Shown: in pieces, positions 7,942 through 28,505 of the stretch
How the letters are laid out: the number at the start of each line of letters is the position of its first letter
How positions within the stretch are numbered: position 1 is the stretch's first letter
Source of the DNA: Laetmonice hystrix
Taxonomy: Eukaryota
Assembly (NCBI GenBank): GCA_965235115.1
Contig: OZ249437.1
Coordinates: 10,602,001-10,666,000, forward strand
Direction: 5' to 3'
DNA: 64,000 nt
The notes under the pieces: model-generated
Seen by the model: the letters and a program-made list of their open reading frames with translations, nothing else
Told to the model about the DNA's origin: nothing
The model's database searches: none
Made by a program: the position numbers and the translations under genes

Positions 7942-8083
7942 TTGGCAGATAAGATCATATTCTTCCTATTGTGTTGTTCTGACGGGTCGCTGTGTTGTCG
8001 GGAGATGTACTCTGCTGTTTGGCGGGCGGGGAACTCCGTTTCACAGAGGTAGCCAAAGTCTCTTGCTAACCGCACGGCTTCAC
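7942..8083 (-). CDS. TFAP2: AP-2 exon 6 (142 nt; first helix of helix-span-helix)
   Basis: Acceptor tttcctgtctgtag|GT GAA GCC and donor GCC AA|gtaagt. Translation (G)[46 protein letters not shown](K) matches the AP-2 EAVHLARDF..CETEFP motif. Confidence 0.96.
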
Positions 8084-15462: not shown

Positions 15463-15526
15463 GGCCTGCAACCTGAACGTCCGGCCTGCAACCTGAACGT
15501 CCTGCCTGCAACCTGAACGTCTGGCC
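15463..15526. repeat. 20-bp tandem repeat (ggcctgcaacctgaacgtcc), 3 copies
   Basis: Copies at 15463, 15483 and 15503. Confidence 0.9.
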
Positions 15527-16351
15527 AAATCAATGGTCAGATCTGACCATGCATTACAACCCCCTCCCCCCTCCTCCTCATCTCCCATCCTCCCCTCTCC
15601 ATCCTCCTTCACATACCGTCACGGTGTTTCTCACACCACAGCCCCCCCCCCCCCCAGAAACACAGGACCACGAACCCGAAACCCCCCGACCCCCCCCCCC
15701 CCCCCGACTGAAGGAGGATTTCTGCCTCTCCATTAGACTATTCGACCTCTCGGCATCCAAGACATAGCGTGCCTTTTAATCGTGGCTCTGATCCGGTCTC
15801 GGATGTCGACTAGTGTTTGTTTGAAGGTAATGTGGATCCGCCGGTCTTGCGATGGACATCTGTACATGAAAGGTAATGGTGTCGCACTTCATATTCGGGT
15901 CAAGCTGACCCTTGTACTCCAGGCGGCCGTACCAGATCAGTCAGATAAAGGGACACCTCTGGGTACAGACTTGATATGGTTATGATGTGACGATGAGGGT
16001 GTAATGAACATGAAAACGAAATGAATGCAATATATTGGGAGCAGAAGGAATGTATAATGGAATGAAGCTTGTTTTTTTGGTATTAATAGTAGTAATTTCT
16101 AGTATTATGCATTATAAGTTGACATTTTGAAAGCATGTTACAAAGGCAAATAACCGGACCACGCTACGGGTCTATCCAATAAATCTTTAACAGTGCAAAC
16201 GACAGTTGTGATGATGACTTCATGTAATCTTAAACTTGTACAAGACTCAAAATCATAATCTTAAATGACTATTAAACAGTTATAATAAACAGTAGGCGAT
16301 ACAAGGGTTACTAAAATGGAAGGAAGCTTGGGTTAGGTATACACCAATGCA

Positions 16352-16374
16352 ACCGTACCCCCTGCAGCACTGGA
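16352..16374 (-). promoter_or_regulatory. Putative downstream docking element B (intron 5)
   Basis: RNA UCCAGUGCUGCAGGGGGUACGGU is complementary to element A. Pairing would loop out exon 5b. Confidence 0.6.
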
Positions 16375-16915
16375 GGAGGACACAACACAGGAATAACACA
16401 GGAGGAAAGTCCCATTGTACCAACACAGCACCAGCCAACAATATACCAGCCATCGCCGCAGTGTACACGTATATATAGGCGCCAGTATAGAGAAAGATGA
16501 ATTAATGCATAAATACATTGAAGCTTGAAGCACAACATAATGTCTGGAGAATAATGTATGGGGGAAAAATATAAAACATTTGATACTAATTGGGTATAGC
16601 GGTTGGAATACCATACGACGCAGCACGATTTAAAAATATCCAAACGTCCGAAGTTAAATAACGGACGTTTTTGGCCTAAGGCTGTGGCCTTTTGGTTTTT
16701 CTCTCTCCATTTTCCTCCTATATGCTTTTCGTTTTCAAAACAGTTGGGTGAGGAGATATGTTGTTGCGTGTAGGGCGTATTATACTTGCAGCCGGAGAGC
16801 GCATGAGGCCAGGTACCGAGCATCCGGTATATATAGCGACCACATTATATACTGCACACAGACTACTGCATGCACGGCAAAATATACGTATGCCTATTAT
16901 CGCCTCCCTACTTAC

Positions 16916-17034
16916 CTTCGACTAAAGCAGTATACAGTGTACAAGTGACTGCTTTGCGCCGTCCGGCAGGCAAATTTAAACCTATTTTCTCTAACCGTTC
17001 TCTCAGAGCTCGGCCACCGTTTTTCGATTTGGCC
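16916..17034 (-). CDS. TFAP2: AP-2 exon 5b (119 nt; divergent duplicate, putative mutually exclusive exon)
   Basis: Acceptor ctttctctaattgcag|G GCC AAA and donor GTC GAA G|gtaagt. Encodes (R)[39 protein letters not shown](G). Phase 2 in and phase 1 out fit exons 4 and 6. Confidence 0.88.
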
Positions 17035-17065
17035 CTGCAATTAGAGAAAGCCGGCAGATTGTATA

Positions 17066-17078
17066 CACGAGACATTTT
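17066..17078 (-). promoter_or_regulatory. Putative selector D, 32-44 nt upstream of the exon 5b acceptor
   Basis: RNA AAAAUGUCUCGUG is complementary to element C. Confidence 0.5.
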
Positions 17079-17231
17079 GTTGGCTAGTGCTGCGTTGGTT
17101 GCGACTGCTCCATGCTGTCCCGGGGGTGTTCTGAGGCAGGGCGCCTGCATCGTGGAGGAGGAGGAGGAACGCAGGAGGGGGGAGGGGCAGGGACATGTTG
17201 TTGGCATTCTGTTCAGGAGCAACAGAGGCAT

Positions 17232-17259
17232 TCCAGGTGCTGCACTCAGGGGGTAAGGT
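17232..17259 (-). promoter_or_regulatory. Putative splicing selector A (intron between 5a and 5b), complementary to 16352-16374
   Basis: RNA ACCUUACCCCCUGAGUGCAGCACCUGGA can form 22 bp with the RNA of 16374-16352 (3 bp, one mismatch, 9 bp, 4-nt bulge, 6 bp, 1-nt bulge, 4 bp). Confidence 0.6.
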
Positions 17260-17279
17260 AATTTTTTTAGGGTCTTTCA

Positions 17280-17432
<153 letters not shown>

Positions 17433-17504
17433 TTATGACGGGTGGGTACAAGACAAGGGCAATAAATGTTACAGGTGTACGTCAAAACGTCAAGTGCACA
17501 ATGA

Positions 17505-17529
17505 CGTCACGTCACGTCACGTCACGTCA
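17505..17529. repeat. (ACGTC)5 pentamer repeat upstream of the exon 5a acceptor
   Basis: atgacgtcacgtcacgtcacgtcacgtcaa, with two further acgtcaa copies just before it. Confidence 0.85.
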
Positions 17530-17547
17530 AAGACATACAAGTAAGCT

Positions 17548-17560
17548 AAAATGTCCCGTG
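17548..17560 (-). promoter_or_regulatory. Putative upstream docking element C (intron 4)
   Basis: RNA CACGGGACAUUUU forms 13 contiguous pairs (one G-U) with AAAAUGUCUCGUG at 17078-17066. Pairing would loop out exon 5a. Confidence 0.5.
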
Positions 17561-20500
17561 GAGGCATACGTCAAACTGATATAAAAATAACAATAACATA
17601 TGGAATGATTGAATATTTTCATATACATAATGACAATCTATTATAAGCAAATGTAAAGATATATGTAAAGTTATACACATTACACATCAGTATATAGAAA
17701 CAACATTTAATGGTAGGCCCCTACTATCATATATAGTAATTATGAAAAGGTTCTATTGAACATTAGGTCATAGACGCCAAGAGACCACCGTAACAACAAA
17801 CTATTCATATAAAAATAATCATAATTTAGTAGATTCAGTCGTGCAGAGACGTATACGCAGACCCAATTGTCTAGACAATTAATACATAGCATGATAATAG
17901 TACGGTGGTTTTGGTAGCAGTAATTATTGCGCTACATATCCACAGTCTGGATCCAATCCCTCTGAGAAACCCGATATTAGATCAGGCATACTGCTCTTGG
18001 CTCGACTCGGGGTTTTATGAATACAGACAAATCCATCTTTGCCTGTCGCTCACATTCGGCCGGGAGCGGGGGTTTCTGCCCGTATCACCGACAGGCAGAC
18101 AAAGTACAAATCAGTCATTGTCCGAGAAACTGGCATCATCCAGATAAACCTTCGGACACCTGCATCCTCTGGGCCCCCAGCTCATCATTGGCGATAAAAC
18201 CTTACATGAATACTAATGAAGGGGCAATGTTTGGACGACTAGTGTGACGTGGGTGTTTGTAGTTCAATGTTAGAAATACAATACTAAACCTATAATACGC
18301 AACAATACAAATGGCTTGAAATACGTTTTCTGACTTCGCAAGTGTTGGTGATCAAGTAGCTAGGCCTAGGCCTATACTAGAAAGAGAGTTGGCACTAACG
18401 CGATTGTTAGGACCCCCTACTACTGAGCGATAATAGGGAAAGGGTCCTATATTTCAGGGAGGGTTTATTATCTTCAGTCGGGGCTGATTGGAATGGCACT
18501 TGACGGCCACTACTGGTCTCTCGTCAGAGCTGGCAAACTCCTCGTTGGGTTTCCAATACCTTCTCCCGACACTATTGGGTGGTGTCGGGCCTCAGAAACA
18601 TCGACGCTCAAGTACGTTACACGACGTACAATACAGATTAACACTTTGCCTTTAATGAGGTCCAAGAGGCGCGAGTTTTGTTCTGGACGCGTTGACAAAC
18701 ACTAGGGGAAGGCGCGCCGGGCTCCGAGTGGCACTATTGAACGTTCGGTAACAAGTCCAACAGAGCAGGCGAGGACTCTTGATATTTAATTGCGAAGTGA
18801 GAGGGGGCAGAAGGACTGAAGTCGCAAACCGGCCCAGTGGCTGGGCGAGTGCCGGAGTGCTCATTATCCGGCTGTCGGATCTGAATCCGGCTGACGAACT
18901 TCACCACAATGACATCTCCCAACGAGCATGCGCACTACTCTTGTCCGAGACTCCACCCCACTGAGAAGGTCACCTCGTTATGGGATTATCATCAACGGAT
19001 TATCGACTGGGATATATTCTGTTATCGATTTATAAGTGCATCCTGCAACATGACAGAAATGTACTTATAGCCTACATTAGAGAGTTGGTTCCTGCATGAC
19101 TCGTTACTATAATAATGGCACAACTCATGGAAGGAGGGGGGGGGGGGTTAAGGCCGAGTAACATAGTACATTAACACCTTTGATGGGGGAAGTTGTATAA
19201 AATGTATGAGTCTTAGATTGTAACTTTGTTACAGGTGCACATCATCACCAACCCTTACTTGAATACTTCCCCGGGCCCAGATTAATCCCATTGCAGTTAT
19301 TTTCGCACCATAAGATTTACTATACCGCTAGAGACAGCTGGCCCCTTCACCAGCTGTGTCCATGTGCTAAGTACGGGTCACGGCTCCATTTGATTTTGAA
19401 TTTATGACCGTTAAGATGAGCATTATTATGTAATTATTATCCGACCCGGTCAGTTCGTAAGACCAGGGTTTTTTTCATCTTCTAGCGGGGTATTATAGAG
19501 ATGCACAGCGGCAGAATGAAGCGACTACAATCGACTTCCTGATCTGGGCCCGGTGGAATGACATAAGATGCACATATCATTTCTCGAGTGGCGGAGGTAA
19601 AGCAATCGGCTTTACAATAGGTATCTCGGAGAGGTGGTTCGTCGGCAGACGGAATCGGGTCTAGAGTTTCCATCTTACTCCCATGCAATGTCAAAGGGTC
19701 AAAGAGACTGCTCCTCCCCTAACAATGGGACTGGACCTTCATGACAAACTGACCGCTCCTTTCCACGTGACCGATCAAAAACTCTTCAGAAGCCGTTTCC
19801 TTGGCTTTTACGACATGCCGCTGACCCCCCCCCCCCCCCCTGCAATTCCCACAGAGCGACCCCTAGCGGAGCCAATCGACAGGTTCAGGCGTCGCATCTC
19901 CATCGCGGATCCATAATGAAGTGACTCATAAGGCACCTTTGTGGTGGACAAGGCAATATTTCCATGCACACACCGAAAACAACGTGGCAAAGGAAAGTGC
20001 AAACAGGACGGCCGGGTTTGAGCCGCCCGACGCCCCGACCCGCACCGGTCGGACCTTGTGTGATATATGCCCTAAAAGCCCCTTTTATTCAATTGCACGA
20101 CCCCCATAAATGTGATTATTCTATGGAAAGGCCCAATTAAGCCGAATTTCTGTAATTCCGCACTGGCCGCTTAACCTCTGCAGGGACTCTGTCGCTGTGG
20201 GCGCAGGGACCGTTTGAAATGGATACTCGCAGCATTCAACGGCATGAAAGCTTTTTTCCCCCATAATCCACTTGAGCTGGGGCTAGTTCAGCGCTGGCAT
20301 CAATGGGTTGGCTGGGCCAAGGTCTGCAAGTGTTAGGCCCAGCCACAGCAGTTGTTAGATGGAAGGGATTGGGGGGGGGGGGGTCTAATGTAGTACCACC
20401 TCCCCACTCGACGCACTGAGCGTAAACTAAGGGATTAAGACAGCTGAACAATGACCAACACGACTGGTTGCCAATAGCGATCTTTGCCAATATCTCACAG

Positions 20501-28306: not shown

Positions 28307-28505
28307 CTTCGTAATACTCCTCCTAGAAGTGATGCATTTAAACATTCCGGTGGTGATAGTCGTCTTTGAACTTCAGCTACTGTCACCTTGTATTTTGAGG
28401 TGCTGCTTAGCAACGAGAGACGGCCTGGTACACTGCAGAACACATCAGTCGGCGCTGTCACCCCTGAGATCACGATGTCTTTCTGGTCAGGTTTACGAAT
28501 ACCGG
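28307..28505 (-). CDS. TFAP2: AP-2 exon 4 (199 nt; N-terminal part of the basic DNA-binding domain)
   Basis: Acceptor tttttcttgcag|CC GGT and donor CGA AG|gtgagt. Encodes [65 protein letters not shown], the AP-2 signature sequence. Confidence 0.97.

What the first reader, a model, noticed from the sequence alone, without database searches (positions are those of the whole stretch)
16352..17259. Downstream RNA pairing A:B that would loop out exon 5b
Seen: the RNA 26-53 nt after the 5a donor (ACCUUACCCCCUGAGUGCAGCACCUGGA) is complementary to an element about 540 nt past the 5b donor (UCCAGUGCUGCAGGGGGUACGGU). The duplex has 22 bp with one mismatch and two bulges. A 9-mer match alone is expected by chance in this search space, but the 13 further paired bases are not. 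Established: selector-to-downstream-docking pairing controls mutually exclusive exons in Drosophila 14-3-3zeta and Mhc. Inference: A:B pairing hides 5b and favours 5a.
Basis: partly seen in the sequence, partly recalled or inferred. Interest (0 to 1): 0.8.

Follow-up and report, generated by a model that had tools for sequence, protein, structure and literature searches.

The report
RNA stem enclosing AP-2 exon 5b

Summary
The A:B pairing is there as described: 22 bp, one mismatch, two bulges, about -36 kcal/mol. On its own it is not beyond chance. 24% of same-genome control tiles and 4% of shuffles reach that energy, and it disappears from a 2.25-kb fold.

It has 25 of 26 positions paired including two G.U, at -45 to -49 kcal/mol. 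None of 300 shuffles and 4 of 334 natural controls match it. The 26-mer is unique in the 627-Mb genome, and its pair probability is about 1 in every fold.

A' ends 39 nt before the exon 5b acceptor. The stem encloses 5b in a loop of about 630 nt, and 5b's 3' splice site also sits in a local hairpin.

Three other species have tandem exons 5a/5b separated by only 57-63 nt. Here the intron is 250 nt, and removing the block from A to A' leaves 64 nt.

Best reading, at about 45%: a lineage-specific insertion created a stem that represses 5b and favours 5a, much like stem II of Drosophila srp. There is no RNA data, no close relative and no convincing competing helix, so function is inferred.

The scan had separate notes on this same stretch for the exon pair and for a C:D pairing.

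The parts
17285..17403 (-). Exon 5a of the single TFAP2 (AP-2) gene, 119 nt. Acceptor is cuuucag|G and donor is AAG|gugagu.
   Evidence: it matches PF03299 profile positions 46-84 (E 1.6e-12).
16916..17034 (-). Exon 5b, 119 nt, a tandem copy of 5a (75-76% nucleotide identity). Acceptor is aauugcag|G and donor is AAG|guaagu. It has three residues (V29, C31, Y34) not seen in 53 distinct exon-5 peptides.
   Evidence: searches (D1; the same PF03299 positions 46-84; PDB 8j0q and 8j0k), 51, and 61 (long branch).
17232..17259 (-). It contains the core GCAGCAC.
16352..16374 (-). It contains the core GUGCUGC.
17074..17099 (-). Element A', the upstream arm of the dominant helix. It ends 39 nt before the 5b acceptor AG and contains GCAGCAC. 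Predicted pairing extends over 17132-17061.
   Evidence: (I1).
16419..16444 (-). Element B', the downstream arm of the dominant helix, 472-497 nt after the 5b donor. It contains GUGCUGU. Predicted pairing extends over 16382-16468.
   Evidence: (I1).
16618..16639 (-). A third, partial docking-like site (GUGCUGCGU ... AUUUU). It is the partner of A' in a fold of the nascent RNA before B' has been transcribed.
   Evidence: (I16, 73% complementary).
16994..17055 (-). Local hairpin holding the 5b polypyrimidine tract, the acceptor AG and the first exon bases: -23.7 kcal/mol, z -2.3.
   Evidence: There is no equivalent hairpin at 5a or at 5b of L001 and L003.
17150..17196 (-). C/U-rich low-complexity tract inside the block between A and A'.
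15641..15705 (-). Two poly-G runs in the RNA sense, which can pair with the C-rich tract at -50 to -56 kcal/mol. The sequence is low-complexity and repeated across the genome.
   Evidence: and 14 (spike in depth).
28307..28505 (-). Exon 4. It ends with AG of a split Arg codon that is completed by the first G of 5a or 5b.
7942..8083 (-). Exon 6, 142 nt. The 5b-to-exon 6 intron is 8832 nt.

Best explanation
The 250-nt intron between the two alternative exons 5a and 5b of this animal's only TFAP2 gene carries a 186-nt block that the other three species lack. The block's two ends, A and A', are complementary to elements B and B' lying 470-560 nt downstream of exon 5b.

In the pre-mRNA, A':B' forms a long-range stem. 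Its core is 25-28 bp, and predicted pairing extends to about 40-59 bp; A:B is a weaker outer extension. The stem encloses exon 5b in a loop of about 630 nt, and its base lies 39 nt from the 5b acceptor, so the branch-point region is squeezed between the stem and a local hairpin over the 3' splice site.

This should hinder use of 5b, both 5a-to-5b splicing and exon 4-to-5b splicing, and favour joining 5a to exon 6. Reading frame backs up the exclusion: 119 nt is not a multiple of 3, so including both exons or neither shifts the frame.

Shown: the sequences, their uniqueness in the genome, their statistical excess, the predicted thermodynamic stability, and the short ancestral-type intron in the other species. 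Inferred: that the stem forms in vivo, that it lowers 5b inclusion, and that the block was an insertion that replaced steric exclusion.
For: - Strength of A':B': 26 nt, 25 positions paired including two G.U, -42 to -49 kcal/mol.
- Controls: 0 of 300 dinucleotide shuffles reach it (z -6.3), and 4 of 334 same-genome tiles do (2 if low-complexity hits are dropped).
- Uniqueness: the 26-mer with up to 3 mismatches occurs only at these two places in 627 Mb, and neither arm region belongs to a repeat family.
- Folding: pair probability is about 1.0 in both the 1104-nt and the 2251-nt folds, and adjacent pairs 17116-17100: 16395-16414 have p 0.8-0.98.
- Strand asymmetry: two of the three differences between the arms are G.U in the transcribed sense. 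The sense duplex is -42.3 against -34.5 kcal/mol for the antisense; for the extended arms it is -75.5 against -55.5.
- Shared core: A and A' share GCAGCAC; B and a third site share GUGCUGC; 4 of the window's 13 copies lie within 880 nt.
- Local structure: the 5b 3' splice site lies in a species-specific hairpin.
- Relatives: L001/L002, L003 and L036 have tandem exon 5 with introns of 63, 60 and about 57 nt. Removing 17259-17074 here leaves 64 nt.
- Exon identity: both exons map to the same Pfam positions, and each is 119 nt.
- Experimental analogue: srp stem II (PMC4691838).
Against: - No RNA data, so neither use of 5a or 5b nor any effect of the stem has been seen.
- No close relative was found, so no covariation test was possible.
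- The pairing is absent from the three distant species with the same exon pair, and their introns cannot be aligned to this one.
- Local inverted repeats of this strength occur in about 1% of random tiles of this genome.
- There is no convincing competing helix, so as it stands this is a constitutive stem, not a switch.
- A:B alone is at chance level and depends on folding context.
- The G.U asymmetry is weak evidence; my estimate of its chance probability is about 0.16.
- Thermodynamic folding of kilobase-long pre-mRNA ignores bound proteins and transcription kinetics.
Confidence: 0.45

Rival explanations
1. Neutral by-product. A small local inverted duplication or templated insertion left complementary intron stretches. 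These either do not pair in vivo, because proteins and co-transcriptional splicing intervene, or they pair without changing exon choice. Mutual exclusion then rests only on reading frame and nonsense-mediated decay, plus splice-site competition.
For: About 1% of random tiles of this genome carry an equally strong inverted repeat. There is no conservation in L001, L003 or L036. No competing helix was found. Including both 119-nt exons, or neither, shifts the frame.
Against: The helix sits exactly around one exon of the pair, 39 nt from its acceptor. The three arm differences have left 25 of 26 positions paired, two of them as G.U in the sense strand only. The flanks and the stretch between the helices show no residual homology (p 0.4-0.7), so a neutral duplication would have had to be only about 26 nt long, or else only the arms were preserved. 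The shared 7-nt core in five elements is also hard to explain this way.
Confidence: 0.3
2. The inverted repeats drive back-splicing of exon 5b into a 119-nt circular RNA, as flanking complementary introns do for many circular-RNA exons.
For: The complementary arms lie 39 nt upstream and 472 nt downstream of a single exon that has strong splice sites.
Against: From my general knowledge, a 119-nt exon is short for a single-exon circle. No RNA data exist, and the DNA-only contigs cannot show back-splice joints.
Confidence: 0.08
3. The repeated GCAGCAC / GUGCUGC cores are binding sites for a splicing regulator, for example a protein that binds YGCY-type motifs, and they act as single-stranded elements. 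On this reading the complementarity is incidental.
For: Four of the window's 13 copies of the 7-mer or its complement cluster within 880 nt around 5b.
Against: Complementarity runs far beyond the 7-mer: 26 nt for A':B' and 22 bp for A:B. The two motif orientations are sorted strictly by side of the exon, which is what pairing predicts.
Confidence: 0.07
4. Only A':B' is a real feature, and A:B, the finding as submitted, is a chance match that plays no part. This is a sub-question that overlaps the other readings, so its odds are not additive with theirs.
For: 24% of natural tiles and 4% of shuffles match A:B's energy. Its probability is 0.00 in the 2251-nt fold, where A and B each find another partner.
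Against: It is nested collinearly just outside A':B', shares that helix's 7-nt core, and has p 0.4-1.0 in the 1104-nt fold. B is also transcribed before the competing partners at 15.4-15.6 kb.
Confidence: 0.4

Closest known systems
Drosophila serpent (srp) exon 4.1/4.2, downstream pairing 'stem II' (Us-Dd), Yue et al. 2016, PMC4691838
   Same: A two-exon mutually exclusive cluster in a transcription-factor gene. A selector lying between the two exons pairs with a docking site downstream of the second exon. That pairing promotes the upstream exon, and the exon inside the loop is suppressed.
   Different: srp also has a competing upstream pairing (stem I), its elements are conserved across Drosophila, and both were validated with disruptive and compensatory mutations. 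Here there is no credible competitor, no conservation data and no experiment, and the animal is not an arthropod.
Downstream-docking-site systems of Drosophila 14-3-3zeta, Mhc and MRP1 (as summarised in PMC6071210)
   Same: The docking element lies in the intron downstream of the cluster and the selector lies in the intron between the variant exons.
   Different: In those systems several selectors, one per exon variant, compete for a single docking site. Here both selector-like elements (A and A') lie in the same intron, so every combination encloses the same exon.
Steric-hindrance mutual exclusion, where the intron is too short to splice (classically alpha-tropomyosin exons 2/3; cited from my own knowledge)
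   Same: Three other species have only 57-63 nt between 5a and 5b, and this species has 64 nt once the block from A to A' is removed.
   Different: In this species the intron is 250 nt, so steric exclusion should no longer hold.
Duplication model for the origin of competing RNA structures (Ivanov and Pervouchine 2018, PMC6071210)
   Same: Arms sharing a common core (GCAGCAC x2; GUGCUGC or GUGCUGU x3) suggest that the arms themselves were copied.
   Different: That model copies one stem arm together with the exon. Here the exon duplication is older (or recurrent) and the arms appear to have been added later.

Membership tests
Docking-site/selector (competing RNA structure) control of mutually exclusive exons | A tandem cluster of homologous exons of which only one is used | tested here: inconclusive
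   There are two 119-nt exons, 75-76% identical, both matching PF03299 positions 46-84. Including both or neither shifts the frame. Actual usage was not observed, because no RNA run holds the locus.
Docking-site/selector (competing RNA structure) control of mutually exclusive exons | Intronic elements flanking a variant exon whose complementarity exceeds chance | tested here: met
   For A':B', 0 of 300 shuffles and 4 of 334 natural tiles match it, and the 26-mer is unique in the genome. A:B alone does not meet this (13 of 300; 79 of 334).
Docking-site/selector (competing RNA structure) control of mutually exclusive exons | Competition: two or more mutually exclusive pairings that each select a different exon | tested here: not met
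   The best pairing between the upstream and middle introns is -33 kcal/mol, which is background level. C:D is -21.9 kcal/mol with p 0.00. Both A and A' enclose the same exon.
Docking-site/selector (competing RNA structure) control of mutually exclusive exons | Conservation of the elements, with compensatory substitutions in related species | tested here: not met
   In L001, L003 and L036 only the exons align, and there are no strong pairings around 5b in L001 or L003. This rules out deep conservation only. Close relatives were not available, so covariation could not be tested.
Docking-site/selector (competing RNA structure) control of mutually exclusive exons | Disruptive and compensatory mutations change and then restore exon choice | not testable with these tools
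   This needs a minigene or a genome edit.
TFAP2 (AP-2) transcription factor gene | TF_AP-2 domain encoded across exons 4-7, with vertebrate-like exon sizes | tested here: met
   PF03299 positions 1-45, 46-84, 78-133 and 134-197 fall on successive exons. Exon 5 is 119 nt and exon 6 is 142 nt. The best PDB matches are TFAP2B and TFAP2A. The gene is single-copy in this genome.

The most novel reading that the evidence does not exclude
An evolutionary hand-over between two ways of enforcing mutually exclusive splicing. The ancestral AP-2 exon pair was kept exclusive by an intron of about 60 nt, too short to splice. In this lineage a 186-nt insertion destroyed that block and, through its two ends (A and A'), created a long-range stem that encloses 5b and took over the job. 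This would be a docking/selector-type RNA structure outside arthropods and vertebrates, in a worm's master developmental transcription factor, caught close to its origin.
Probability: 0.2. Interest if true: 0.7.

Novelty: new member of a known kind. Interest (0 to 1): 0.45.

Why it matters
Exon 5 encodes the most conserved part of the AP-2 DNA-binding and dimerisation domain, so the choice between 5a and 5b gives this animal's single AP-2 gene two versions of its core. Vertebrates get comparable diversity from five paralogous genes.

Nearly all validated RNA-pairing controls of mutually exclusive exons are in insects, with a few in mammals. A candidate in a spiralian-type worm would broaden that picture. 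This one comes with sister species that still use a too-short intron, so it offers a natural experiment on how such RNA structures arise.

If the stem has no effect, the locus is still a useful negative example. It would show that a 25-bp, genome-unique inverted repeat placed exactly around an alternative exon can be neutral.

Tried and rejected
- RNA evidence. Two searches for sequencing runs found only DNA runs of one sample.
- Run X4. Laying the reads showed that X4, a different organism, shares only poly-G sequence.
- Transposon origin. Rejected: both arm regions and both short arms are single-copy in the 627-Mb genome.
- One long decayed inverted duplication. Not supported: the stretch between the helices and the outer flanks show no similarity above shuffles (p 0.4-0.7). 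An apparent gapped alignment owes most of its score to the 26-nt core.
- Close relatives. Searching the protein collection with intron-spanning open frames found none. The closest exon-2 match (82% identity, P0234) lies on a 1-kb contig for which no DNA is served.
- Analogous pairings in L001 and L003. Only background-level pairings were found.
- C:D 'switch' partner. It is -21.9 kcal/mol and never forms in the fold.
- Known RNA families. Only a sub-threshold mir-214-like hit turned up 600 nt upstream of 5a, and it folds into three small hairpins, not a precursor.
- Exon tree. The tree meant to date the duplication is unresolved with 119 columns.
- Unrestricted RNAduplex on whole introns. It gives meaningless giant 'duplexes', so I replaced it with 40 x 40-nt windows.

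Full report
**What the locus is.** The finding lies in a minus-strand gene. Translating the minus strand recovers a complete TF_AP-2 domain split over successive exons:
- Exon 4 is 28505-28307 (PF03299 positions 1-45).
- Two alternative exons, 5a (17403-17285) and 5b (17034-16916), both match positions 46-84.
- Exon 6 is 8083-7942.
- Exon 7 is about 4100-3785.

The best solved-structure matches are human TFAP2B and TFAP2A. Only these two exon-5 copies exist in the 627-Mb assembly, so this is the animal's single AP-2 gene. Both copies are 119 nt with consensus splice sites. Because 119 is not a multiple of 3, using both or neither shifts the frame. Notes by other agents on this genome describe it as a worm; I could not name it.

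**Checking the observation.** They pair as described: 22 bp (14 G-C, 8 A-U), one U.C mismatch, a 4-nt bulge and a 1-nt bulge, at about -36 kcal/mol. One contig of an independent DNA run spans the whole region without a difference, so the sequence is real.

- I scanned 40 x 40-nt windows between the 250-nt 5a/5b intron and the first 1000 nt downstream of 5b. After dinucleotide-shuffling both, 13 of 300 shuffles contain a duplex at least as strong (z -1.9).
- Among 334 tiles of identical geometry, cut from 18 other 10-kb pieces of this genome and from the rest of the window, 79 (24%) do.
- In the full 8.8-kb intron, A:B ranks about 15th.

**The stronger helix.** The repeat finder's top inverted repeat is 17074-17099 against 16419-16444: 26 nt, 88% complementary at the DNA level (I1). 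In the transcribed sense, two of the three differences are G.U pairs, so 25 of 26 positions pair. The energy is -42.3 kcal/mol for the bare arms, -44.6 with four further pairs, and -49 in the window scan.
- No shuffle out of 300 reaches it (z -6.3).
- Four of 334 natural tiles do, two of them low-complexity.
- With up to three mismatches, the 26-mer occurs only at these two places in the whole genome, and the reversed-pattern control gives none.
- By my own arithmetic, the expected number of such pairs between a 250-nt and an 8.8-kb random sequence is about 3e-5.
- Neither arm region has any other copy in the genome, so this is not a pair of transposon copies.

I call these elements A' and B'. 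They are nested inside A:B, giving the order 5a - A - A' - 5b - B' - B.

**Folding in context.**
- In an 1104-nt stretch (5a to 616 nt past 5b), both helices have pair probabilities near 1.
- In a 2251-nt stretch (17700-15450), A':B' stays at about 1.0 and is extended by neighbouring pairs: 17116-17100 with 16395-16414 at p 0.8-0.98, with weaker pairs out to 17132/16382 and 17061/16468.
- In that longer fold A:B drops to 0.00. A and B find other partners near 15.46-15.62 kb, including G-rich runs.
- B is transcribed before those rival partners, so A:B is not excluded kinetically. It is, however, the fragile part of the structure.
- Before B' is transcribed, A' is about half unpaired. Its only partner is a third, partial site at 16618-16637, which also lies downstream of 5b.

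**Anatomy relevant to splicing.** A' ends 39 nt upstream of the 5b acceptor AG. The loop closed by A':B' is about 630 nt: 39 nt of intron, the 119-nt exon and 471 nt of intron.

The 5b polypyrimidine tract, the AG and the first exon bases are also predicted to sit in a local hairpin at 17055-16994 (-23.7 kcal/mol, z -2.3, 4 of 200 shuffles as stable). The equivalent 66 nt at 5a, and at 5b of two other species, fold no better than shuffles. Any branch point at the usual distance from the acceptor therefore lies between two helices.

A and A' share the 7-mer GCAGCAC. B and the third site share its complement GUGCUGC, and B' has GUGCUGU. Four of the window's 13 copies of the 7-mer or its complement lie in these 880 nt, sorted by side of the exon.

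**Other species.** Searching the protein collection with open frames that run through 5b or 5a found three further species with tandem exon 5:
- L001/L002 (assembly GCA_022702875.1), with a 63-nt intron between the two exons.
- L003 (ERZ21781341), with a 60-nt intron.
- L036 (a marine metagenome scaffold), with an intron of about 57 nt.

Other animals sampled have a single exon 5. Introns that short are the classical steric way of preventing two neighbouring exons from being spliced together (my knowledge; alpha-tropomyosin).

In these three species only the exons align to the window. No pairing above background surrounds 5b in L001 or L003. L036 was only aligned to the window and was not scanned for pairings; its 849-nt scaffold ends about 200 nt past its 5b.

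In the window the intron is 250 nt. Removing exactly the block from the first base of A to the last base of A' (17259-17074, 186 nt) leaves 25 + 39 = 64 nt. That fits a lineage-specific insertion bounded by the two selector-like arms, but it is an inference. I found no target-site duplication and no donor copy. The stretch between A and A' shows no significant similarity to the stretch between B and B'.

**Exon 5b itself.** Exon 5b is the more diverged copy. It has a long branch and three residues, one of them at an otherwise invariant alanine, that are absent from 53 distinct exon-5 peptides. This fits either a specialised exon or a rarely used one.

**Interpretation.** The best-supported reading is that A':B', with A:B as a possible outer extension, forms in the pre-mRNA, encloses 5b and lowers its use. 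This favours 5a and prevents wasteful 5a-5b joining now that the intron is long enough to be spliced.

The nearest experimentally established analogue is stem II of Drosophila srp. There, a selector between the two exons pairs with a downstream docking site, promotes the upstream exon and suppresses the exon inside the loop (PMC4691838). Downstream docking is also described for 14-3-3zeta, Mhc and MRP1 (PMC6071210).

This locus fails the defining 'competition' feature of those systems. I therefore describe it as working like the loop-out half of such a system, not as a member of the docking/selector class.

**Limits.**
- No RNA run holds the locus.
- No close relative could be found, so there is no covariation test.
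- Inverted repeats of this strength occur in about 1% of random tiles of this genome.
- The sense-strand G.U asymmetry is only suggestive.
- The three DNA runs show no single-base variant between 15917 and 17585 in the rows listed, while the flanks carry roughly one per 100 nt. One individual's haplotypes cannot separate constraint from coalescent chance.

I put about 45% on a real effect on 5b use, about 30% on a neutral inverted repeat, and the rest on circular-RNA formation, protein-binding motifs or other roles.

Noticed in passing
window 17074-17259; L001:2347-2409; L003:10137-10196; L036:467-523: The intron between 5a and 5b is 57-63 nt in three other species but 250 nt here. Deleting the block bounded by A and A' leaves 64 nt. 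This looks like a lineage-specific insertion that abolished a steric (short-intron) exclusion.
   Followed up: partly
window 16994-17055 (-): The 5b 3' splice site is buried in a local hairpin (-23.7 kcal/mol, z -2.3). The equivalent stretch at 5a, and at 5b of L001 and L003, folds no better than shuffles.
   Followed up: partly
window 16364-17243: The 7-mer GCAGCAC occurs twice upstream of 5b in the RNA sense, and its complement GUGCUGC occurs twice downstream, plus GUGCUGU in B'. Four of the window's 13 copies lie in 880 nt, sorted by side of the exon.
   Followed up: partly
window 17150-17196 and 15641-15705: A C/U-rich tract lies between 5a and 5b, and RNA-sense poly-G runs lie about 1.2 kb downstream of 5b. 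They could pair at -50 to -56 kcal/mol, which would also enclose 5b. The sequence is low-complexity and repeated across the genome (large depth spike at 15600-15799).
   Followed up: partly
window 15464-15526: Three tandem copies of a 20-nt unit (GCCTGCAACCTGAACGTCC-type). One DNA run lacks one unit, a 20-nt indel polymorphism at 15503.
   Followed up: no
window 17497-17536: A run of ACGTC repeats containing TGACGTCA-like (CRE-like) palindromes, about 100 nt upstream of exon 5a. The read-laying tool also skipped it as a repeat.
   Followed up: no
window 15917-17585: The listed rows show no single-base variant in three DNA runs of one sample across 1.67 kb around both exons, while the flanks show roughly one per 100 nt; 13 variant rows were not shown by the tool. 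There is only a 2-nt indel at 16718.
   Followed up: no
window 16916-17034 (-): Exon 5b carries V29, C31 and Y34, none of which appears in 53 distinct exon-5 peptides from 219 related open frames. Position 29 is otherwise an invariant alanine. In L036 the second copy is also the more diverged one.
   Followed up: partly
window 18022-18118: A weak mir-214-like Rfam match on both strands (24.8 bits against a gathering score of 66.7). The RNA folds into three small hairpins, not into a precursor.
   Followed up: yes
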